From: Sphaerodactylus townsendi
Taxonomy: Eukaryota
Length of the DNA: 64,000 nt
Direction of reading: 5' to 3'
NCBI RefSeq assembly: GCF_021028975.2
Contig: NC_059426.1
Location: forward strand, 142,166,001-142,230,000
The notes under the pieces: generated by a model
What the model was told of the DNA's origin: nothing
Database searches by the model: none
What the model saw: the letters and a program-made list of their open reading frames with translations, nothing else
Translations under genes and position numbers: made by a program
Shown here: positions 28,575 through 55,795 of the stretch, piece after piece
How the letters are laid out: every line of letters begins with the position of its first letter
Numbering within the stretch: position 1 is the first letter of the stretch

Positions 28575-28877
28575 GAGAGCCAGCGTGGTGTAGTGGTTAA
28601 GAGCAGGTGCACTCTAATCTGGAGAACCGGGTTTGATTCCCTGCTCTGCCACTTAAGCTGTAGAGGCTTATCTGGTGAACTAGATTAGCTTGTGCACTCC
28701 AACACATGCCAACTGGGTAACCTTGGGGTAGTCACAGTTCTTTGGAGCTCTCTCAGCCCCACCCACCTCACAGGGTGTTTGTTGTGAGGGGGAAGGGAAA
28801 GGAGTTTGTAAATTCCTTTGAGTTTCCTTACAGAAGAAAAAGAGGGGAATATAAATCCAACTCTTCTTCTCTTCTTC
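28575..28877 (+). mobile_element. tRNA-derived SINE (same family)
   Basis: Closely similar to 1456-1750. Confidence 0.85.
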
Positions 28878-31778: not shown

Positions 31779-31830
31779 CTGTAACACATTAAAATGATAA
31801 TTGTTTGTCAAAAATTCCAAACAGTAACTA

Positions 31831-32083
31831 CCCTGTTTCCCCGAAAATAAGACATCCCTGGAGAATAAGACGTAGTAGAGGTTTTGCTGAAGTGCTAAAT
31901 ATAAACCATCCCCCGAAAGTAAGACGTAGCAAAGTTTTTGTTTGGAAGCATGCCCGTCGAACAGAACACCAGAGCATGCAGCTGTGGAGCGGAAAAATAA
32001 GACATCCCCTGAAAATAAGACATAGCGCATCGTTGGGAGCAAACATTAATATAAGACACTGTCTTATTTTCGGGGAAATACAG
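31831..32083. mobile_element. 253-bp Tc1/mariner (Tc2-like) MITE
   Basis: TIRs CCCTGTTTCCCCGAAAATAAGAC / GTCTTATTTTCGGGGAAATACAG; TA flanks; subterminal AAATAAGAC repeats. Confidence 0.9.
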
Positions 32084-32597
32084 TATGTAATCGTTCAGCA
32101 AGAAGACTTTAGAGTTGTCTAAATGTCTAACCATTCATTGTGGAAAGTTAGCTGTGCTAACCTGTTGCAGCCAAAATAGCAAAGCGTTTTGTGGCACCTT
32201 AAGTACAAATATTATGGTATAAACTATCAGGAGCAAGAACCCACTTTATCAGATACATGAAGAGTTACACTTGGTTGGAAGAAATATATACAGGGGTACA
32301 AACAGAAGAAGGTGAGGGGGCAAAGGAAAGAGTTATTAAATAGCAAAGCCAGAAGACTCAACAACAAGCATGTTGCCTCATTTTGCAGAACAAAGAACAA
32401 GAACCAGACAAAAGTATAAACAGTCCAGTCCAGTTTTGACAGAGTAAGTCGCAGAATGGCTGGCACATGACAGCATTTGTTATGGAGAATGTGCAGGTGA
32501 ATGAGAAGACCTGGGATTGTACCAATCTACATCTCAACAACAATGAAGACAATGTTCTTTGTCTAGTGACAGCTGCAGTTCTCCCATTTAGGCTTAC

Positions 32598-34108: not shown

Positions 34109-35603
34109 CATGGACGTAGGTAAGGGGGTGGGGGGGTTCCCTCGGGTTTGAAAAAAAACCCCATTCATGTCCGAAGCTCCGCCCACCCGTTTGTGGGTTT
34201 TTAAAACATTTTAGTGATTTTACGGTTTTTGGCCTGCAGGGGGCGCATTGTTTGTGCTAGCAGCACCAAACTTTCAGGGATTGTTTGGGGGACTCATCTG
34301 ATACTAAATCCCAGATTTGGTGAGGTTTGGTTCAGGGGGTCCAAAGTTATGGACTCCCAAAGGGGGTGCCTAATAGGAGCTAATAGAAGATGGGGGCTAC
34401 ACCTTTGAGGGTCCATAACTTTGGACCCCCTGAACCAAACTTCACCAAACCTGGGATGTATTATCAGAAGAGTCTCTTATTGATCCCACCCAAGTTTTGT
34501 GACGTTTCGTCCAGGGGGTCCAAAGCTATGGACTCCCAAAGGGAGTGCCCCATCCTCCATTGTTTTCAATGGAAGCTAATAGAAGATGAAGGCTACATCT
34601 TTGAGGGTCCATAACTTTGGACATCCTGAACCAAACTTTACCAAACCTGGGATGTACTATCAGGAGAGTCTCTTATTGATACCACCCAGGTTTTGTGAAG
34701 TTTGGCCCAGGGAGCCCAAAGCTATGGACTCACAAAGGGGGTGCCCCCATTCCCCATTGTTTCCAATGGGAGATAATAGGAAATGGGGCTACACCTTTGA
34801 GGGTCCATAACTTTGGACCCCCTGGACCAAACTTCACAAAACCTGGGTGGCATCATTAGGAGAGACTCCTAAAGATACCCTGAAAGTTTGGTGCTTCTAG
34901 CTTAACCATTGCACCCCTGACAGCAGGCACCACCCAAATTTCCCCAGATTCTCCTTTTAAATCCACCTCCTTCTGCATGGATTTAAAGGGAGAATCTGAG
35001 GTCCTCAGTTTAGAAGAAGAAGAAGAGTTTGGATTTATATCCCCCCTTTCTCTCCTGTAGGAGACTCAAAGGGGCTTACAATCTCCTTTCTCTTGCTCTC
35101 TCACAACAAACACCCTGTGAGGTGGGTGGGACTGAGAGAGCTCCGAAAAGCTGTGACTAGCCCAAGGTCACCCAGCTGGCGTGTGTGGGAATGCACAGGC
35201 TAATCTGAATTCCCCAGATAAGCCTCCACAGCTCAAGTGGCAGAGCAGGGAATCAAACCTGGTTCCTCCAGATTAGAATGCACCTGCTCTTAACCACTAC
35301 GCCACATTGCAAGTGATGCTGTTTGGGGGTGGATTCCAGCATCACAGTGACTGCCCGGGTGGTGTGTGTGTGCAAAACTCAGATTTTGCACCAGGCTCCA
35401 TTTTCCCTCTATGCCTCTGCCCAGAGGGGAGGGGCAGGGGAGGGCAGGGCAGGGGAGTCTGCAATCCCCGACCTCAAAGAGCTGCTTTTATAAGCGCTAG
35501 GCCAGGGGTGGGGCTTGGGAAGGCGTGGCCATGCACTAGGGGCGGGTGGGGGTGTGGCCCCACCCCTGAACCCCCCCATAAAAAATCTATACCTACGTCC
35601 CTG
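34109..35603. mobile_element. 1.5-kb hAT non-autonomous element with internal ~196-bp tandem repeats and a nested SINE
   Basis: TIRs CATGGACGTAGGTA / TACCTACGTCCCTG; 8-bp TSD CTGTTTAT (34101-08, 35604-11). Confidence 0.87.
35012..35305 (-). mobile_element. tRNA-derived SINE nested in the hAT element
   Basis: Reverse complement of the same family; (GAA)n tail. Confidence 0.85.
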
Positions 35604-38005: not shown

Positions 38006-39699
38006 CTAAATGAAAGAATGCTTCTGTAGATACTCTTACAGACACAAGTCTGCAAATTCATCCTGTTATTTTAACTATTAAAAGGTCAAACTGTGATAAG
38101 TTCTGCAAAAAAATCCAGAACAGAATCACACCTTTTGCAATGGAGAAAGAAAGTTAGAGGCACTGTATTACGAGAAGTTCCTATGGAAGAGCACACATGA
38201 GCTGTTCAGGTGCAACAGGACAGCAGCTTCCCAGATTGTGGTCTGAAACTGGCACCCAGATTTACTTTCCTCCTAACGGCAGAGGTTTAGCACTGTAGGC
38301 ATCCAGCCTTTCTTAGCCACAGCAGATGCAGAAAGGCAGAGAACGTGTGGGGATTCTTGGTCACGGCAGCTCCTCCCTGCTCCTTTCCTGGCTGGCCGCC
38401 AGTTTCATTGGGCAGAGATACCATGGTCTCTACTAACACTAGAGCTGCCAGCTCTGGCCTGGGAAATTCCTGGAGATTTGGGGGCAGTGCCTGTGGAGGG
38501 TGGGAATTTGGGGAAAGGAAGGACCTCACTGGAGTGTAATGTTATGGATTCCACCCTCCAAAGCTGCAGTTTTCTCCAGGGGAAGAGGCCTCTGTAGCCT
38601 GGAGATTAGCTCTAATTCTTGGAGGCCCCACCTGGAGTTTGGCACCCCCTCTAGTGCCAATTAATGCCTCGCAACTTCATAAGCAGACATGTGCCAGTAA
38701 GATGCTTACTGAAGAGGTAGGGGGAAAATATAGGGGAAGATTTTAAAGCAACTTGGGAAGTTTGAAAAATGCCACAATTAGAACTCCAATAAACCCAATT
38801 CTTGTACGTTGAAACTGACTCTGGAATCTCCCAAGTGGCCCAAAGAATTCTAGAAACAAGAGGGCAGAATGAAATTAGAACCACACTTCTACAAATAGAA
38901 ACTGACAGCACGAAGCCTATAGAACACAGAGCCAGTGTGGGGTAGGGGCTAGGGCAGGGGCCACTAACTTTTTTTTTGAGTCTGCAGCCACATTTGGAAT
39001 TCTGACACAGAATGGTGGGAAGAGGTGGGCTGCCGCAGGAGGTGGAGCTAGTCACAAAATGATTGACACAGCTTAATCTCAGTAATACGGTGCAGACCCT
39101 TGTTTTGTGATGGCAGCTGTTGCCAAAGCAACATTTTTTAAAAATCTGCCCAGCCAACCAAATCTCCAGTAATCAGTCAGAATCCTTGTTGGGCAAAAGC
39201 CTTACCTGGCCCTGCCCGCTACCTGAAAAGAGTTGGCAGACACGAGAAAAGGTGTCGGCGGACACGATGGTGCCCACACTGGGGGACCCATGATCTAGAG
39301 TGCTGGATTAGGATCTGGGAGACCAAGGTACAAATTGCCTCTGCCTTGGAGGCTCATTAGGTGACCTTCAGCCTGTCACTGTCTTTCTCAGCATAATCTA
39401 CATTGTAGGGTTGTGGGAAGGTAGCATGAAGGAGGGGGGGAAATTATGTACACTGCCCTCAGCTGCTTGGAAGAAGGGTAAGATATCAATATACTAAACA
39501 AGCCTACAGGATATCCAGATTATGCTGTTGCCCTTGATCACTTGATACCTGCAAGTACATTTGACATGTGATAAATGAGACACAAAGATGGGAGTCCTAA
39601 GAACACTTTCTCAGGTGTAAACTGCACTGATTAAGATGAAACTTAGTTCTGAGTAGGTCTGCTTAGAATTGCTCCCACAGTTACACACTGTGAACTTAC

Positions 39700-42600
39700 C
39701 ATTCTCCATGACAACATTTACAGCCATTGTACTTATATCTTGAGTACAGACAGCCTTAGGCTGCTCACTGGGAGGAGCACTGTAGGTGCTCAGTCCAGTC
39801 ATTCTATTGATGTATACCGTCCTACCCAAGGATGCATCAAACTGATCAAACCACTCAGAAGGATGACACTGTGATTCCTCATTCTGAGCTGGATTTGCAT
39901 AATCTGAAGCACCTTCACTGATACTTGACAGGACCACCATAGGTTCATGTGTGTTCACGTTTTGCTTTGAAGATCCATCCATAGCACATATGTCTTCACA
40001 GGTGTCTTCAGGACATACCTCTTTATTGGGCAATGCCAATTTTCTCTTTTGGGAGATAACATATTCTCCATCAGTATCAATGAAAGAAAGGCTGGCAGTA
40101 TCTTCCATAGCTATTGTTCTTGCATTAGAGGTTTCCATAGGGTTACTTTGCACAGGACAGTGTGAAGCAAAACTGTAGCTCTTTGTCCCTGTTTCTCTTG
40201 TGAACAACTGAGATACAGAACAGTTATTTTGCAAAAGATTATTTTGAGATGAGAGACACCTGTCTTCAGTTTTTGGACTCAAATTTAATTGGGATTGTCC
40301 AGAAAGCTGCCCTTTGCGTTCTGAATGTATAGCTTCTTTAAGGCGTCCCTTCATTTTAGATACTTTAGCAGCAAGTGTTCCTGTAAATCCAGAAGTTCTT
40401 GGATCTTTTGTTCTGCTTTGGGAGTAATCTCTCAGGGTCAGAGGGCTCTCTCTTACATATGTTTTCTTGCTTTCTTCAAAGGAGAACTGAGACTTTTCCA
40501 AGGGAAAAAGGCAATCACAGCTATTATTATTACAACTAACTTGCTCTTTATCTGGAAGGTCACAAATGCTTGAGTGTTCATGATCTTTATTCTTATCAGG
40601 AACTGCAAACTCATCCCTATTTTTTTCAGTTATGGATTGTGTATTCTTTATGGACCCATAATGTCGCCTGAATCTATCTAATGACCCCAGTTTTGGATGC
40701 AAACTCAGTTTTGTAAAAGTACAGCGCCCAAATCTAGTTAACTTCTCAGGCATTTGCTTTCTTGAGGTTGCATTATCTACACTACAAACAGAACTGGATG
40801 GAGCAATGGAAATCAGTTCCTTGGTATATTGTCTCACGCCCTCACTTCTGCCAACTGCTGGAAGTGAATCCATCTCATCCTTCTGGCTGGATATATGCCC
40901 AATTTCCATGCGCTCGTAGCCCTTTCCTGTGCATATACCGCCTTCGGTCATCCTCAAACATTCTTGAGTATTTGAAGTCGGTCTTGAAAAAGTGAGCTTT
41001 TTGTCAAATACATCCCTGGCACTTACTGGACCTAGTACATGTGGCATGTTTGATGAATGGTTTATGTCTGCTGTTTTATCTGGTGACTGACTTTGCATAA
41101 GATGAACTAAAAGGCCTGTAGAACACAACTTTAAAGATTCTTGTCCCACTGTTGCTTCTCTGTGGGAATTTAACTCTGTAGCAAGTCCTCTGCCCTCTTC
41201 TGCCATCCTGCATTTTCTCGACAAAGCACCTTTTAAGAGAAATTGATGTTTACATAAATCAACATCTCTCACATTTACAACATGTCCAAAAGTGGAAGAG
41301 TTGGAACTACTTTCCTGAAATGCTGGATCATGCAGGCTGCTTGTGTTTTTGTCAGGCGTCTCAAAACAAAGTGATGTGCCACTATCACTGCCTGTTTTTA
41401 AAGCGTCTGACAAGTCCTGTCCACAGCCTTCTTGTGGACTCTTGGAATTTAAGACCTCAGTCTGTGGATCATCATATATATTTGGCTCTTTGTGCATGTT
41501 ACTCAATTTTGGGAGATCAAGAGTGGGGCTATCTTTGTTGGGCAAAGAATTTTCCACTTTACTACTTTTTCCATGAACAGGCTCAGTGATAGTCAAATCT
41601 GTTTCCATATTGTTAGTGGGTCCTGTGAGATCTGATGTAATTTTGTCAAGAGTTATTTTCCTTCTGACAGACTTTGATTGCAGATTAAACATTTCATAAG
41701 AATCCACAATATTATCACAAGCTCGCTTAAAATTCTCCTGCATGTGTTTCTCCTCAAGAAGAGAAGGATGTAAAGTCATAGCAGAATTCAAACAAAATTC
41801 ATTGTATTCATTAAATTCTTTAACATCTTCACCACACAGCTCAATAAACAGATGTTCTTGCTTTAAGAAGGCTTTCACTCCTTCTTCAATGCAAAGCAGG
41901 AGAGCATCCCAACTGCGAAACTCGATTAGAGTTTTTGCAGGTTCCAAACACACATCATATTCATCATGCTGACACTTGACATTCATAACAAAGACTCCAT
42001 AGAGCTCTGGGCCAGAACGATGGCGAACAGGACTCGAAGTGACAGGTCCGCTTTTTGTTTTACATATAACACTTTGTTTTCTTAATAAAAAATCAATTAG
42101 CTTATGTATTCTTGTTTTTAATACCAGTCTATTGTTCACATACAAAAACTGAATATTTTTATTGTAATGCCCTTCAGAACTGATATGGCCACTTATCTCA
42201 AATCCTCCAGACTTATGATATATTCCTCGCAATTTCTGTGATTTACTGAGGCCATAAATTTGAGAAAACCGAGAGCACACATCTTTTGTCTTGGATAGCT
42301 GAAGCACCATAGAGCAGGAAGCATCATTTCTTAACGAAAAAGAGACTGAGGGATGCATAAGTGAAACAGCCTCTACCTTATGCCTCACTCTCTCAAATTC
42401 CAGTATGGAATCCATGCATCTTCTCCGCACAGGCAACTGATGAAATAAGCTGTACACAGTCACTGTTGTTCCTGCAGTTGGTCTATTCAATTCTGCTTCA
42501 GAAACTTCTAGTCCTTTCCCATTGTGAAATAATTTCAAAAAGGTTTTTGCAGTCTTATTTGTCTTGGATGCTATTTCTACTATGCTGGCCATGCTTGCAA

Positions 42601-42898
42601 TGCTTGCCAAAGCCTCTCCACGGAAGCCATAACATGTTAAATTTTCTAGGTCTTCCACCGAGTAGCATTTACTGGTAAAATATCTGTTCCCGACATTGCT
42701 GAGGTCTTCTCTTCTCATCCCAGAGCCATTATCTACCACCTGGATTTTAAATGTTTCCAGATCCACTCTAATGGCCACACATGTTGCTTTGGCATCTATG
42801 CTGTTGAAAACTAACTCTTCAGCACACTGCCCCAGAGAAGTGATGGCCACTCCAGAACGCAAACTGGTTTGCACTTCTTCAGTCAATCGTTTGATCAT
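39700..42898 (-). CDS. MLH3: MLH3 (MutL homolog 3) large first coding exon: GHKL ATPase, transducer domain and long linker
   Basis: Motifs EELVFNSIDA, DNGSG, GFRGEAL, GTT, DVCLEPAKT; acceptor with exon start at 42966; donor G|GTAAG after 39700; 3199 nt. Confidence 0.97.
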
Positions 42899-43918: not shown

Positions 43919-44070
43919 GGCCCCTTCCACACATGCAGAATAATGCATTTTCAATCCATTTTCACAATTATTTGCAAGTGGATTTTGCTATTCCGCACAG
44001 TAAAATCCAGCTCCAAAGTGCACTGAAAATTGATTGAAAGTGCATTATTCTGCACGTGCGGAAGGGGCCT
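43919..44070. mobile_element. Palindromic MITE (GGCCCCTTCC...GGAAGGGGCC); second copy at 11191-11318
   Basis: Inverted terminal arms of ~30 bp; two homologous copies. Confidence 0.75.
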
Positions 44071-44343
44071 CTGTCAGGTAAACGACCTCACAGAAAAGGA
44101 ACTACTGAGTAGACTGCTTCCCAAAAAGGTACTCTTAGGGCCTCTATTTGGCATGGTGATGAATCGTTCTTAAGGAAAAACAGACATGTTGGTGTCCCAG
44201 TCGGTCCCACGCTTTGTGTAGCACGGCAACTAGCATTCATATGCACGTATTTAAGCACAGGACAGGAGCACTATATATAAGAAACTGTTGGTGTCCCAGC
44301 CCGGTCTCAGGAAAGTCTGACTGGCTTCCAAGTCGCAGGTCAC

Positions 44344-44600
44344 CTTGCGACGGCTAGAAAGTGAATCATCAGCCGCTCACCCCGCACCACGACAGCAGCA
44401 ATGACGGTCTCTGTCTCCTCCTTCCTTCCATCCCAAGCTCTGACAGCAACTTCCGTTTTGCTTTTTCGCTCCGCTTTCAAGCCCCCCCCTCAAAAAAAAG
44501 GGGGGAGTCCCGTTAACCGTAACGAAGCCGACTGCTCTTCCACACAGACGTGCACGAGCTTGCGCTGTTAACTGTGCAATTCACCGAACAGTAGTGAAAG
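44344..44600 (-). promoter_or_regulatory. MLH3 promoter / non-coding exon 1 (CpG-rich, ETS CGGAAG motif ~44450; candidate donors after 44381 and 44344)
   Basis: CpG enrichment ~1.4 kb upstream of the first coding exon; GG|GTGAGC and AAG|GTGACC donors on the - strand. Confidence 0.55.
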
Positions 44601-44810
44601 GACGAAGGCCTGCAGAATGAGCATAGGTGCATCTGATCTATGGACTTCAATTCCCATCGTACACTGAGATTACTTGCAATGCACCATGGGAACTGTTGAT
44701 TTTGTCGAATCCCTGGTTGTACCGTTTGCGGGACTTTACAAATGTGCTTTTTGATACGTTTTAGCTGAATCTTGCTGCTGCCATAAGCGCAATGCCAGCT
44801 AATGATAATA

Positions 44811-46967
44811 CCGTGTTTCCCCGAATATAAGGCATACCCATGAAATAAGACATAGTAGAGGTTTTGCTGAAGTGATCAATATAAGGCACCCCCCAAAAAT
44901 AAGGCGTAGCAAAGTTTTTGTTTGCCCGCCACGGAACAGAACACCAGAGCAGGAAGCTGTGGAGCGGCCCCTGGAGGAAGTGCACCAGCAACAGCAACGT
45001 TTGGCTTTTTACCCCGCCTTTCTTTCCCATAGAAAGAAACCTCGGGCCACCGAGGAAAGAGCAGCTTCTTTGTGCACGTTGGGAAAGGTCGTAGTGCCTC
45101 TTTTCTCCCTCTCACCTTCTACTTGAAAGCCACCTTGAGTCTCCTTACAGGAGAGAAAGGTGGTTTATTAATCCAAACTCCTCCTCTTCTTCTAGTAAGT
45201 TAAAAAAAACCCTTCTAATATTTTGAGACGTTGCTGCCCGCCCCCAGAGCTAGCTGGCCGAGCAGCAAGTGGGCATTTAAACCTGCGCCCGAGGGCCAGT
45301 CCAGCCTCTGTTTCTGGCTGGTGGGGCTCGCCGGCAGCAGCGATGGCAGCGCCCAGGCACAGGAGCAAGTGGGCTGCTGCTGCCTTCCTCTCCCCCTCCC
45401 CACGCCTGCAAGGCTCGGGCTCACCTTGGGGCCTCGGCCGCTGCCCCCTCCGGCACCCTTGCTGCCTCTCCCGTCGCTGCTCCTGCCCCTATCTCCCCAG
45501 GAGGGATGATGACAGGGACGCCTGTTGTGCTGAGGGAGGTCGTCGAGGCGGTGGTCAGGAGCTTCACCAAGCACACGCAGGGCTCCTTCTTCCTCCTCTT
45601 GTTTACCAGCCCGCTTCTCCACCACCTCCTCCTCCTTCCCCCACACCCTGCAAGTTTGCAAGCTTCAGCTTGCAAAAAGACCCCAAAGTTGCAGCCTTTC
45701 CCTGCACCCCCCACAACGGCCCGGGGGTTGCAACTTGCAAGCATCGCCCTGCGGTTTGCAAGCAGCGCTGGAAGGATCGTGGGTATTGCTCCCTCCCATT
45801 TTTTTTGCAAGGGATGCCTGGAGATGCAAAACTGCGAACTTGCCCCCGGGCCTGGGCACATTTGGGTTGGTTGGAAAGACTGGCCCAGGCCGGGGTTTGT
45901 TTTGGCAATGGGTCCCTCCCCACTCGGTCGGGCGCGCGGCTTGCAAGGCGCACCGGGTCGGTTTCTGCATGCACGGCTGAAGTGGGGAAGGGGGACCAAA
46001 CAGCTCCCTAGCGGTGCTGGATTCTGCAGCGCTTTTGCACCGCTGCTTAGGCCAGTAGGGAGAATTAGCGTACTTTTAGGCCCCGTTGGAAGAAGCAAAG
46101 AGTGACTTTTGAGGTTTAGGGTGTGGTTGTTCATGCAGGAGATGGAAAGGGGCGGACGGGATTCCCCTCTCAGGACTTAGCAGCCCTAACCTGCAGCTCA
46201 CTTCAGAGCCCAGCAACAGCTCAGCCCAAGCCCCTCGAGTCTTCCAAGAGGGGGAGGAAGGGTCACTGGGCTGTCAAGAAAGCGGGCGGGATGAGACGAG
46301 GAGGCCCGGCCGGAGGGGACAGCTTGGGGGCAAGCAGGAGGCGCTGGGGTGGAGGAAGGAGAGTGAACGGAGCAGGGAGAAAGTCAGAAGGAAAGAGAAA
46401 GAGAACGGAGCAGAGAGGGAGCCAAAACAGAAGAGAGAGAAATGCAAGGGGGAGAGAGAGAAGACGAAGCAAGACAGGGAGAGAACAGAGAGAAACTGCA
46501 AGAAAGGGCTACCAGGAAGGGAAGGGGGAATTGGAAGCCCTGAGAGTCAGAAGGAGGGGAAAAGAGGAGGGTATCTAGGGAAGAGGCAAACCCTGGGTGG
46601 TGCCTCTTCAACAACTCCCGGGACATCCTGCAGTCTGGAAGACGGGTGGGACAGCCATCACTCTGTGGCTAACAGCCTTATTGAATGACAGACTTCCTAA
46701 AACCGGGGTCTCAGACAGGGACAAGACCACCCCAGATAGGGAAGGAGGGAAGGCACAAATTCTTGATAGGATTCACATTTTGTCTAGTTATGCTGGTTTG
46801 TGATGACAACTACTGTACAGTATATAATAAATGTTCATTTTTTTGTTCAACAATAAATGTGAATTCTTCTTCATGGAAAAATAAGACATCCCCTGAAAAT
46901 AAGACATAGCGCATCTTTGTGAGCAAAAATTAATATAAGACACTGTCTTATATTCGGGGAAACAGGG
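44811..46967. mobile_element. Non-autonomous Tc1/mariner (Tc2-like) DNA transposon with GC-rich captured cargo (Pack-type)
   Basis: 24-bp TIRs (22/24 match) CCGTGTTTCCCCGAATATAAGGCA; TA on both flanks (44809-10, 46968-69); ends homologous to the 31831-32083 MITE; no transposase ORF. Confidence 0.88.
45420..45585 (+). pseudogene. LIX1L: Captured fragment of LIX1-like (LIX1L) exon 1 inside the transposon
   Basis: [23 protein letters not shown] vs recalled human LIX1L [23 protein letters not shown] (19/23); Ala/Pro-rich in-frame stretch upstream; needs BLAST confirmation. Confidence 0.75.
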
Positions 46968-48444
46968 TAGGCTGATACGTAGCCTGCTCCTAAGCTGAAA
47001 AGGCTCACGGATACATCAGCAGTGTTCCTTTACCTTTAAGCAATGAATTACGTTGTTTACGTAAGTTCTGGACTCTTTTGCACTGAAGTTTATTATTTGT
47101 AATAACAGTATTTGTAAAAATCTATGACATGGGCCTCTTCATGTTCACAGTTCTTACGACATAAAACCTATCCATGTTATGTAGCCTTCCCTATGATGAA
47201 CGTCGTGTGCCCACTGTATTTATAAACAATTAAGTAGATGATAGGTTGGACATCTACTCCCGTGTTTCCCCTGAACATAAGTCATAATGAATTCAAGACT
47301 TCTAAAGACAGAACATAATGAAAGCAGTTAGCATAAACTGCATTAGTTGCTTGTATGATTTCTTGCCCTCAGCTTCCCCTACCCTTAAACAACTTCTCAC
47401 TAATGTGGACATAGACTACCAAGATGCCAACTTTGTCCCCTTATACACTCGAACAACACAGTCACTGTACCAATAACAACACCAGCCACATTATCGCAGG
47501 TTCATTCACTTGCTGATCTGCCAGCCTTGTTTGCCATCAAATGTTAACAATGCTCTTCTACTCTATACATCAGCCACACAAGCCAGCCACTACACAAAAG
47601 GATAAATGAACATAAATCTGACATTCAAAATCACATTACTCATAAACCAGTAGGGAAACATTTTTTATCTTCCAGGACATTCCACTGCTGACATAAGAGT
47701 ACCAGTTCTACAGAGAATCTTCAAAGGGAGATCACAATGACAAAATTACCAAATTTAGAATGAGTATTATCCACACCTCTACTAATCTGCCCTAGTTCTG
47801 ATTATTTTGCATTGACTTTTTGCATCCTGACTCCAGCATGCCCTCCTTTTCAACTCACCCACTACCTTCTGACCTAGATATAAGGGCATTCTATATGTAT
47901 CTGACAAAGTCAGCTTTCACTTACAAAAGAATATACCCTGTGGGGGAAAAACTGTTATTTAAAATGTGCTACACCTTTTTCAGCATAGAGAGCTCAGCTG
48001 AAGATCCATCTGTGACGGCTTCCTGACCCTTCTTCGTAGTTGAATGCTCCATGGGGTCCTAGTACCAGTTAGTACTACTGAAGCTTGGTGTTTGGGGAGG
48101 TTTGGGGATGGCAAGCGTGGTGGCAGTCAAGTGACAGGGTGGATGGGGGTGGCAAAAGCAGAGGCTGGTCGGTGTTGCTGGGGGCCCTGGGTGGTGTGGG
48201 GCTTCTTCTGCTGCCCTGCTGATCCCTCTAATGGGCTAGTGTGACCTTGAGCAGCCCAGAGCTTTCCCAGCTGGTCCGAGAGACACTGAAGCCGAGTAGT
48301 GTGGCTTCGAGTGATCCAGAGTTTTTCCAGCTGCTCTGGGAACCACTGGAGCTGGACAGTGCGGCTGTGGACAGTTCAAGGCTTCCTCGGCCACCCTGAT
48401 GACTTCTGGAGTGAGGTGGTGCAGCCCTGAGCCATTCCCCACCG

Positions 48445-48725
48445 CACTGGTGATTAAGAGCAGATGGACTCTAATCTGGAGATCCAGGTTTGACTCCGCA
48501 TTCCTCCACATGAATGGCAGAGTCTTATCTGGTGAACCAGATCTGTTTCTCCGCATTCCTGCTGGGTGACTTTGGGCTAGTCACGGTTCTCTGGAACTCT
48601 CTCAGCCACACCTACCTTACCAGGTGTCTGTTGTGGGGAGAGGAAGGGAAAGGGGTTTGTAAGCCCTTTTGAGGCTCCTTACAAGGAGAGAAAGGGGAGG
48701 TATAAATCCAAACTGTTCTTCTTCT
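48445..48725 (+). mobile_element. tRNA-derived SINE; older copies at ~8665-8860, 14570-14760(-), 21830-22040(-), 39290-39500 and 52390-52620
   Basis: Same head, core and tail. Confidence 0.75.
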
Positions 48726-54170: not shown

Positions 54171-55448
54171 ATGGCTCAATTGCAGCTTTCTGTGTGTTCT
54201 CATGCGGATCCAATGGCATCCAGCCCCAGTCTTCCTGCAATAAGTCTGAAGAAATGTCATTCAGAGGCTCTTAGAGAGCAGCCAAGGTTCGAACACCTGC
54301 AGACTAATATCCAGCAACAATTCCTGTCCAACAAAGATAAGAAGCTGAAAGATGTTTGCATCCAAAAAGGCCGGAGTGCTTCCTGTTCTGACCCTGCAGA
54401 AAGTAGCCAGCCAATTTCAGAGAATGTGGGCTTCCAGTCTGCTGGCCCTCATGACTGGTACCTCAAGAACCAAGCTAGCATTCTTCCCTCCCACTGGAGA
54501 GCCAAGCGGAGAGAAGGTGTAGACAGGGCATACCCACTAAGACCAGTCTTCCATCAAAAAGCTGGTAATGGGGCCATAACTAGTTCTTTGCAAGATGCAA
54601 GCCCGCCAGCTACACAGACTGCTTCCCCTAACATTAGTTCAGAGAAAAAAGGAAGATCACATGCAGTCAAAGCCCAGCATGTTGGAGTGCCTTGTTCTTT
54701 TTCAGTAGAGCAGTCATGGAGAGCAGCTGCTTATCCAAGAAGGGCTGAGTCCAGCTACATTCAAAAACTGGAGGCTGCTGGTAGGAATTTGGGGGAGGAG
54801 ATCCAGAGAAAGGAGGCCCTCCTCAGGGAGAAGCTGATGAGAACAGAAGAGGAGCTCCGGAGGATCCAGTGGGAGAGGCGACAGGCAGAGGCAAAAGCAA
54901 GGAAGGAACATGGACTATGGATGCCTGAAAGGAAAGCAGCAGACATTTCTTGGGTTCAACTTTCCAGATCTACAGCCCAGCCAAGTGATGATCAGTGGAA
55001 GAATGTTCCAAATAGCCCTGTAGCTTCTAAAGAGACAACCCCAGTTCCCTCAGAACTCCACATGGAAAGGCTTAAAAAACAACGGTTGGTGGCTAGCAAC
55101 AGTAAAATTCAAGGAAAAGTTTCCCAGGAAAATGCAACAGCTCCTTGTCCCGAGCTGGCTTCCAGGCATGACCAGCCTCCAACAACAGTCCCTTTAGGAC
55201 AGACTGACAGCATGGTTGCAGCAGCACCACTACCACCAGCATACGTGGATGCAGTAAGCAGTGTAGAAGACTGGGGTGAATGTAGTTTTTGTGGACGGAA
55301 GCTTTACAGCGCCAGGTTGGAGAAGCATATAAGTATCTGCAGCAAGAATCACAGCTCCAAGAGAAAAGTATTCGATTCAAGTAAAGCCAGAGCAAAGGGC
55401 ACTGAATTAGAGACGTTTAATCTCTTGATGGGCTCAGATGCCTCTCAG
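54171..55448 (+). CDS. ZC2HC1C: Zinc finger C2HC domain protein 1C, coding exon 1 (coiled coil plus first C2HC finger CSFC...H...C)
   Basis: 426-codon exon; acceptor ends 54151; CAG|GTAAG donor; KRKVFDSSKARAKGT motif; synteny. Confidence 0.92.
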
Positions 55449-55795
55449 GTAAGGCTCTGATTTATTTATATACTATTTCTTCGTGAAACCAAGTGCCAAG
55501 CTGTCTCTGATACAACCTTTAAAAATATAACCAGATCAAATGCTCTCAGACCACCCTCTAGTTCCCACCTTGCCTAGCTAAGGTTCAATTCAGTTTTTTT
55601 TCCTTGGAGTAACCCTTAAAGCCTTATGTGTGCTGCAAGTCACAGCTGACTCACAGCAACCCCAGCAAGGGGCTTTCAAAACAAATGAGAAGCAGATGTA
55701 ACTTGCTGTTGCCTTCCTCTGCAGAGTCTTCCTTGGACTCCCTTCAAAGTACCAACTCTGCTTAGCTTCCAAGGACTGATGGGATTGGCCTATAC

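What the first reader, a model, noticed from the sequence alone, without database searches (positions are those of the whole stretch)
44811..46967. Pack-type Tc1/mariner transposon carrying a captured host-gene fragment (LIX1L exon 1)
Seen: a 2157-bp element with 24-bp TIRs (22/24), TA on both flanks and no transposase. Its ~1.9-kb interior is a GC/CpG-rich patchwork unlike the AT-rich flanks. On the + strand, 45515-45583 reads [23 protein letters not shown], preceded in frame by AHLGASAAAPSGTLAASPVAAPAPISPGG. Recalled: human LIX1L has an Ala/Pro-rich N-terminus followed by [26 protein letters not shown] (19/23 identical), and LIX1L is not part of this synteny block. Similarity stops just before YGR. 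Inference: a DNA transposon captured a host first-exon fragment and moved it (transduplication, as in plant Pack-MULEs). This is rarely described in vertebrates and could be a multi-copy squamate gene-capture system.
Basis: partly seen in the sequence, partly recalled or inferred. Interest (0 to 1): 0.85.

Follow-up and report, generated by a model that had tools for sequence, protein, structure and literature searches.

The report
Gecko transposon carrying a LIX1L gene fragment
A small cut-and-paste transposon in a dwarf gecko picked up a piece of the LIX1L gene and other DNA, then spread with that cargo to an estimated few dozen copies, which is a known process but rarely seen at this copy number in vertebrates.

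Summary
The window is Sphaerodactylus townsendi, 1.9 kb upstream of the MLH3 start codon.

- **Element:** 44811-46967 has 24-nt inverted ends (22/24 matching), TA on both sides and no protein-family hit.
- **Structure:** its two arms are those of an abundant 253-bp MITE (sibling at 31831-32083). A 1909-bp cargo sits between them.
- **LIX1L piece:** 45412-45583 matches coding exon 1 of the gecko's own LIX1L, which lies on another chromosome. Identity is 90.6% over ungapped positions, and half the mismatches are CpG transitions. It is an internal piece with no start codon and no splice donor.
- **Other cargo:** one more piece is a truncated SINE tail. The remaining ~1.66 kb has no identified source.
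- **Mobility:** contigs from a related organism show a precise empty site with a single TA. Cargo contigs, including one spanning the arm-cargo junction, have about 35 times the depth of the flanks.

So the cargo moved with the element and was amplified. This is a new, unusually multi-copy member of the Pack-TIR kind already catalogued in animals (Tan et al. 2021). Copy number rests on k-mer depth, not on counted loci. First-stage notes of this scan report two other candidate captures elsewhere in this genome; I did not check them.

The parts
44809..44810 (.). Left TA target-site duplication
   Evidence: Sequence. The empty-site contig of run X6 joins 44808 directly to 46968, leaving one TA (table 8, record 17).
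44811..44967 (+). Left MITE arm. It includes the 24-nt TIR (44811-44834) and subterminal AATAAGAC-type repeats.
   Evidence: 83% identical to the short MITE at 31831-31992. TIR pair I1 and direct-repeat families D1/D2. Alignment A3.
44968..45122 (.). Cargo segment A, source unknown
   Evidence: Absent from the short MITE. No similarity to the LIX1L locus (z = -0.4). A single ~700-depth contig (44845-45151) bridges the arm-cargo junction.
45123..45195 (+). 5'-truncated 3' tail of a squamate SINE
   Evidence: 80-86% identical to SINE tails at 35011-35081, 48657-48725 and 28818-28877. Hundreds of contigs carry loose ends before 45122/45123 that continue as SINE body (table 7).
45196..45411 (.). 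Cargo segment B, GC-rich, source unknown
   Evidence: Not significantly similar to LIX1L exon 1 or its 5' region (z = 0.3). GC 0.61, CpG o/e 0.50.
45412..45583 (+). Captured internal fragment of LIX1L coding exon 1 (parent codons ~49-114)
   Evidence: blastn to L002:10146-10341, E = 2e-46. 90.6% identity over ungapped positions; 8 of 16 mismatches are CpG transitions; 9-bp and 17-bp deletions. z = 70. Protein 26/31 identical to S. townsendi LIX1L. Single LIX1-family hit in 1.84e9 proteins.
45584..46876 (.). Cargo segments C/D, source unknown. Includes a TTGCAA-rich stretch (45650-45950), a purine-rich stretch (46281-46600) and two AATAAA motifs (46826, 46852).
   Evidence: No Pfam, PDB or Rfam match. 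No similarity to the LIX1L locus with 10-kb flanks on each side. Contig depth is the same ~700 as the rest of the cargo in X1. Motif positions.
46877..46967 (+). Right MITE arm, including the 24-nt TIR (46944-46967)
   Evidence: 95% identical to the short MITE at 31991-32078. Alignment A3.
46968..46969 (.). Right TA target-site duplication
31831..32083 (+). Sibling 253-bp MITE without cargo, flanked by TA at 31829-31830 and 32084-32085
39611..42898 (-). Context: large first coding exon of MLH3. The element lies 1.9 kb upstream of its ATG.
   Evidence: Pfam HATPase_c_3 and DNA_mis_repair hits. 100% identity to S. townsendi Mlh3.

Best explanation
This is a non-autonomous, TA-targeting Tc1/mariner-like element of the Pack-TIR type in Sphaerodactylus townsendi.

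Its arms belong to a very abundant 253-bp MITE. That MITE has 24-nt TIRs and subterminal AATAAGAC repeats, which I take to be transposase-binding sites.

At an internal break between the two arms it acquired about 1.9 kb of filler DNA copied from several places. One source was roughly 200 bp from inside coding exon 1 of LIX1L, on another chromosome. Another was a truncated SINE tail.

The inferred capture mechanism is template switching during double-strand-break or gap repair, or at a stalled replication fork. The composite kept both ends, so a transposase supplied in trans could move it. It was amplified to an estimated few dozen near-identical copies.

This copy inserted at a TA 1.9 kb upstream of the MLH3 start codon, after the lineage split from a related organism that still has the empty site.

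The LIX1L piece has no start codon, no splice donor and only the first ~15 residues of the LIX1 domain. It has decayed mainly at CpGs, so it is most likely non-coding passenger DNA.

Shown: the structure, the parentage of the LIX1L piece, the empty site and the elevated cargo depth. Inferred: the capture mechanism, trans-mobilisation and the absolute copy number.
For: - **Ends:** TIRs and TA. Three independent TA-flanked copies of the family: window 31831, window 44811 and LIX1L intron 1 at L002:18748-18979.
- **Empty site:** a 2315-nt contig of run X6 (another study) runs from 44808 straight to 46968 with no extra letters. Its flanks differ from the window by 42 substitutions over 1596 nt (table 8).
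- **Copy number:** in X1, contigs 44845-45151, 45179-45974 and 46061-46693 have depths 701.8, 699.7 and 694. The flank contigs have 19.4 and 21.5. The first of these bridges the arm-cargo junction, so the cargo exists attached to the arm at the same multiplicity.
- **Other organisms:** cargo also exceeds the flanks in X4 (46-162 against 4-7.5) and X6 (93-295 against 43.6).
- **Youth of this copy:** it differs from the high-depth contigs by 8 substitutions in 1895 nt, plus an 18-bp deletion.
- **Parentage:**. The motif GGCTCGGGCTCACC is shared with S. townsendi LIX1L but absent from Gekko japonicus, which places the capture in the sphaerodactyl lineage.
- **No coding capacity:**
- **Short form dominates:** contigs joining 44965 directly to 46875 or 46876 (short MITE form) are abundant, and arm depth is about 1e5-1e6.
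Against: - Copy number comes from unitig k-mer depth, which the tool itself warns is not a copy number. No second cargo-bearing locus was read, so independent TA sites for cargo copies other than this one were not seen.
- X1 may be the sample the assembly came from.
- No autonomous element or transposase with these TIRs was found or could be searched for.
- Only 172 bp plus 73 bp of the 1909-bp cargo has an identified source, so 'mosaic of captures' is shown for two pieces only.
- The LIX1L piece is about 9% diverged from its parent while copies differ by less than 1%. Capture and the recent burst are therefore well separated in time, and the original capture event cannot be reconstructed.
Confidence: 0.85

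Rival explanations
1. Reverse order of events. The 2.16-kb form, or a still longer ancestor, is the original non-autonomous element, and the 253-bp MITE is its internal-deletion derivative. The interior would then be old element sequence that happens to include a gene fragment, not filler added to a MITE.
For: MITEs usually arise by internal deletion. The arm-arm junction of the short form coincides with the cargo boundaries.
Against: By summed depth the short form is about 3 orders of magnitude more abundant, and its copies are more diverged from one another (83-95% arm identity) than the cargo copies are (over 99%). The interior holds a lineage-specific LIX1L fragment and a truncated SINE, so gene capture happened under either ordering.
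Confidence: 0.1
2. Nested insertion. An unrelated composite repeat, another transposon or a retrocopy, inserted into a resident MITE, and that repeat is multi-copy in its own right.
For: The interior has two AATAAA motifs near its 3' end on the same strand as the LIX1L piece and contains a SINE piece.
Against: The junction-spanning contig has the same depth (701.8) as the interior contigs (699.7, 694), so the interior does not occur without the MITE arm. The empty site lacks the MITE as well as the interior. No duplication or terminal structure of a second element is visible at 44967/44968 or 46876/46877.
Confidence: 0.04
3. Single-locus, transposition-independent gap filling. A resident MITE upstream of MLH3 was broken and repaired with filler DNA in place and never moved. 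This is the commonest route for animal Pack-TIRs in Tan et al. 2021.
For: Most animal Pack-TIRs are single-copy and formed this way (PMC8277862).
Against: The orthologous site in run X6 has no MITE at all, only one TA. Cargo depth is about 35 times flank depth, and cargo is also present in organisms where this site is empty. The parent gene is on another chromosome.
Confidence: 0.02
4. Artefact: chance peptide resemblance or assembly chimera.
For: Pfam and the word-seeded protein search gave no hit for the peptide.
Against: The peptide has a single LIX1-family hit at E = 2e-7 in 1.84e9 proteins. DNA z = 70. Flank contigs with 0 differences run into both TIRs, and the interior is covered by independent runs from three studies.
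Confidence: 0.01

Closest known systems
Pack-TIR elements of animals (Tan et al. 2021, Nat Commun 12:4280, PMC8277862), TcMariner subset
   Same: TIR-bounded, TA-flanked, no transposase, and an internal host-derived sequence with an identifiable parental copy. Like their multi-copy cases, the parent is distal (on another chromosome) and the captured DNA is GC-rich.
   Different: They found 115 TcMariner Pack-TIRs, but only 4 multi-copy Pack-TIRs of any superfamily, in frog and alligator. The example they show has three transposed copies. Here depth suggests tens of copies, there is a precise empty site in a relative, and the host is a squamate not mentioned in their main text.
Pack-MULEs of plants (rice, maize) and Ssk-FB4 of Drosophila
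   Same: Transduplication of gene fragments, often GC-rich 5' exon pieces. Cargo is a mosaic from several loci and is amplified by transposition.
   Different: Different superfamily: MULEs have 9-10-bp duplications and long TIRs, against TA and 24-nt TIRs here. No evidence here of transcription, a chimeric ORF or selection.
Stowaway-like / Tc1-mariner MITEs
   Same: The 253-bp sibling form: TA duplication, short TIRs, no coding capacity, very high copy number.
   Different: The focal copy is about 8 times longer because of its acquired cargo. The autonomous partner is unknown.
LIX1L (limb and CNS expressed 1 like) gene
   Same: 172 bp derive from its coding exon 1. The peptide is 26/31 identical to S. 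townsendi LIX1L residues 84-114.
   Different: Not a gene copy. It has no ATG, no splice donor, and only about the first 15 of 249 positions of the PF14954 model. It contains two deletions and CpG decay.

Membership tests
Tc1/mariner superfamily (non-autonomous, MITE-like) | 2-bp TA target-site duplication | tested here: met
   TA on both sides of three copies. The empty site in run X6 retains a single TA.
Tc1/mariner superfamily (non-autonomous, MITE-like) | Short terminal inverted repeats (<100 bp) | tested here: met
   24 nt, 22/24 matching. The ends are conserved among copies.
Tc1/mariner superfamily (non-autonomous, MITE-like) | An autonomous relative with the same ends that encodes a DD(E/D) Tc1/mariner transposase | not testable with these tools
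   No tool searches the gecko genome. The window holds no transposase. The TIR string is not in the paper library.
Pack-TIR (transduplicating TIR element) | TIRs and duplication bound an internal sequence that is not transposon-derived and encodes no transposase | tested here: met
   The 1909-bp interior is absent from the sibling MITE. No Pfam hit in 10 ORFs.
Pack-TIR (transduplicating TIR element) | The internal sequence has an identifiable parental host locus elsewhere | tested here: met
   LIX1L exon 1 on record CM037614.2, 90.6% identity over ungapped positions. This holds for 172 bp only; the rest of the cargo has no identified parent.
Pack-TIR (transduplicating TIR element) | Cargo moved with the element (multi-copy, transposition-dependent class) | tested here: met
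   Precise empty site, and junction and cargo contigs at about 35 times flank depth. Other insertion sites were not read directly.
Pack-TIR (transduplicating TIR element) | Transcription or chimeric transcripts (not defining, but often claimed) | not tested
   No RNA run was listed as a holder.
LIX1 protein family (PF14954) | Match to the LIX1 domain model above its threshold | tested here: not met
   The 74-aa translation gives no Pfam hit even at E <= 10. The domain spans residues 100-348 of the parent, and the fragment ends at residue 114.

The most novel reading that the evidence does not exclude
Sphaerodactylus geckos may host a currently or very recently active Tc1/mariner Pack-TIR family with tens of copies. 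That would make it a rare vertebrate system in which transposition-dependent gene-fragment shuffling can be followed across species and populations. Its GC-rich, exon-derived cargo, landing next to promoters as it does 1.9 kb upstream of MLH3, could act as a portable regulatory or first-exon module, or as a source of small RNAs against LIX1L.
Probability: 0.15. Interest if true: 0.75.

Novelty: new member of a known kind. Interest (0 to 1): 0.55.

Why it matters
Gene-fragment capture by cut-and-paste transposons is well documented in plants. In animals the catalogued cases are almost all single-copy products of local repair.

Here the cargo clearly travelled with the element. There is a precise empty site in a relative, and the cargo appears to be amplified to tens of copies. 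That gives a concrete vertebrate example of the transposition-dependent route. It could be used to test capture models (gap filling against fork stalling and template switching) by comparing copies and species.

It also indicates that a TA-targeting DNA transposon was active recently in this gecko lineage. For the host, the LIX1L piece itself is probably inert.

Tried and rejected
- **Pfam on the 74-aa translation** and the word-seeded protein search on residues 1-60 gave nothing. This is explained by the fragment lying almost wholly upstream of the LIX1 domain and by low-complexity sequence. The exhaustive search found the family.
- **Extending LIX1L homology** upstream (45196-45411) or downstream (45584-45800) was rejected, with z about 0 against shuffles. 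tblastn alignments reaching 45299-45350 are Pro/Ala low-complexity matches.
- **Looking for LIX1L 3'UTR, intron or promoter, or PEX11B,** in the rest of the cargo found no match in the 40.7-kb parental locus.
- **Sources for the other cargo:** Pfam on 10 ORFs, PDB sequences for 4 ORFs (only chance-level hits) and Rfam (one sub-threshold chance hit) all came back empty.
- **Exact-product look-up** of the 199-aa ORF, meant to fetch other copies, is not on record.
- **Scan notes by sequence** were blank.
- **Paper searches** for the TIR string and for LIX1L plus transposon found nothing relevant.
- **Tandem-repeat search** found only a weak 38-bp two-copy repeat in the purine-rich stretch.

Full report
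**1. What is in the sequence**

The region 44811-46967 is bounded by inverted arms. With the TA included these are 44809-44834 and 46944-46969, 26 nt and 92% complementary.

The TIR core occurs four times in the 64-kb window against 0.09 expected by chance. The other two hits bound a 253-bp element at 31831-32083, which is also flanked by TA.

A self-comparison shows that the focal element's arms correspond to the two halves of that short MITE. The left arm (44811-44967) is 83% identical and the right arm (46875-46967) is 95% identical. The 1909 bp between them (44968-46876) is absent from the short form.

A third copy of the short MITE, again TA-flanked, lies in intron 1 of LIX1L itself (L002:18748-18979).

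**2. Species and setting**

The 1095-codon ORF at 39611-42898 on the minus strand is the large MLH3 exon (Pfam). It is 100% identical to Sphaerodactylus townsendi Mlh3, encoded on a 183-Mb record.

The element therefore lies 1.9 kb upstream of the MLH3 start codon. The stretch just before it, 44000-44810, is moderately CpG-rich (o/e 0.72). I could not determine whether that stretch is the MLH3 promoter.

**3. The LIX1L claim**

The 30-residue translation of 45494-45583 was scored against all 1.84 billion representative proteins. Its only hit was a hagfish LIX1-family protein, confirmed as PF14954 (E = 2e-7).

From that protein I obtained vertebrate LIX1L sequences. The cargo peptide most resembled the gecko forms. 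I then found the S. townsendi LIX1L protein in the same 90% cluster as the Gekko japonicus one. Finally I fetched its locus, L002, on record CM037614.2 (196.6 Mb), a different chromosome from the one carrying MLH3.

- **DNA match:** 45412-45583 aligns to L002:10146-10341 (blastn E = 2e-46).
- **Identity:** 90.6% over ungapped positions. There are 16 mismatches, of which 8 are CpG transitions in the parent-to-cargo direction. There are also 9-bp and 17-bp deletions.
- **Significance:** z = 70 against dinucleotide shuffles.
- **Protein match:** 26/31 identical to residues 84-114 of the gecko's own LIX1L.
- **Lineage:** the motif GGCTCGGGCTCACC is shared by the cargo and S. townsendi but is missing from Gekko japonicus. 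The capture therefore happened within the sphaerodactyl lineage.

The neighbouring cargo on both sides shows no similarity to the 40.7-kb parental locus (z about 0).

In this copy the similarity ends at ...KHTQG. Some copies in run X6 carry nine more bases (GGATACGGT, reading G-Y-G) that continue the match (table 4). The original capture thus ended about 5 nt before the exon 1 splice donor.

The fragment has no start codon and no donor site. It overlaps only the first ~15 positions of the LIX1 domain model, which begins at residue 100 of the parent.

**4. The rest of the cargo**

The stretch 45123-45195 is a 5'-truncated SINE tail. It is 80-86% identical to three other SINE tails in the window. 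Hundreds of contigs carry loose ends that continue upstream into SINE body exactly at 45122/45123.

The remaining ~1.66 kb has no Pfam, PDB or Rfam match and no transposase. Cargo CpG o/e is 0.44, which indicates partial decay.

The 'mosaic' reading of first-stage note s1-740420 is therefore shown for two pieces and remains open for the others.

**5. Did the cargo move with the element?**

I laid Logan contigs of four runs on 44000-47800.

- **Empty site:** in run X6 (coded organism C, a different study) one 2315-nt contig covers 44046-44808 and continues with no intervening letter at 46968-47800. This is a precise empty site with a single TA. Its flanks differ from the window by 42 substitutions in 1596 nt.
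- **Flanks in X1:** the flank contigs match the window perfectly, run 22-25 nt into each TIR, and have depths 19.4 and 21.5.
- **Cargo in X1:** the contigs 44845-45151, 45179-45974 and 46061-46693 have depths 701.8, 699.7 and 694. That is about 35 times the flank depth.
- **Junction:** the first of those contigs spans the arm-cargo junction. The cargo is therefore attached to the MITE arm at the same multiplicity, which argues against an independent nested repeat.
- **Other organisms:** cargo also exceeds flanks in X4 (46-162 against 4-7.5) and in X6 (93-295 against 43.6). The family thus predates the split of these organisms and kept transposing afterwards.
- **Age of this copy:** it differs from the high-depth contigs by 8 substitutions in 1895 nt and one private 18-bp deletion after 46305, so it is young.
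- **Short form:** contigs joining 44965 directly to 46875 or 46876 are far more abundant.

Caveats: depth of unitigs is only a proxy for copy number, and the tool says so. X1 may be the assembly's own sample. No second cargo-bearing locus was read directly.

**6. Mechanism**

Shown: an abundant TA-targeting MITE; a derivative carrying 1.9 kb of foreign DNA at one internal point; at least two unrelated sources for that DNA; and insertion of the whole composite at a TA.

Inferred: the filler was copied in by template switching during repair of a break inside a MITE, either by gap filling or at a stalled fork. These are the models discussed for animal Pack-TIRs in PMC8277862. The composite was then mobilised in trans by a transposase recognising the retained ends.

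The roughly 9% divergence from the parent, against less than 1% among copies, means the capture long preceded the recent burst.

**7. Comparison with what is known**

Tan et al. 2021 scanned 100 animal genomes and found 370 Pack-TIRs. Of these, 115 were TcMariner, and only four were multi-copy (frog and alligator). The example they show has three transposed copies, and multi-copy cases were distal to their parents and GC-rich. Their main text does not mention lizards.

The present element fits that kind on every defining feature I could test. It stands out for its apparent copy number and for the clean empty site. I found no paper describing it.

First-stage notes of this scan mention two other candidate captures elsewhere in this genome: s1-740297 (PAXIP1 exon 1) and s1-740239 (a hAT element with cargo). 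I did not check them.

**8. Verdict**

- The exon capture is partial.
- The captured piece is probably inert.
- The phenomenon is already known in animals.

Novelty: a new member of a known kind. Interest is moderate.

Noticed in passing
window 47255-47290: A solo end fragment (TACTCCCGTGTTTCCCCTGAACATAAGTCATA) resembling the left terminus of the same MITE family lies 290 bp downstream of the element. It has no matching right end nearby.
   Followed up: no
L002:18748-18979 (S. townsendi LIX1L intron 1): A short TA-flanked copy of the same MITE family sits inside the parental gene, about 8.4 kb downstream of the captured exon-1 stretch. A break in a MITE this close to the exon could have provided the setting for capture, but that is only a thought.
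   Followed up: partly
window 45650-45950: The hexamer TTGCAA occurs seven times, often as part of GCTTGCAAG-like palindromes, within 300 bp of cargo of unknown origin.
   Followed up: no
window 54171-55460 (+): A 429-codon ATG-initiated ORF with no Pfam family. It could be a single-exon gene or a large exon of the gene upstream of MLH3.
   Followed up: partly
window 45954-46115: Copies of the cargo vary structurally here. Lower-depth alternative contigs and a 34-nt skip (46005 to 46040) appear in runs X1 and X4, which suggests subfamilies of the element (tables 5 and 8).
   Followed up: no
window 48440-48725: A near full-length SINE, preceded by a GC-rich stretch at 48000-48440. Tandem Repeats Finder reported no array there.
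   Followed up: partly
run X9 (coded organism D) on window 46124-46624: Two low-depth contigs (2.6 and 3.4) match the cargo with 0-1 differences, although nothing from this run covers the flanks. This could be a close relative at low coverage or a mixed sample.
   Followed up: no
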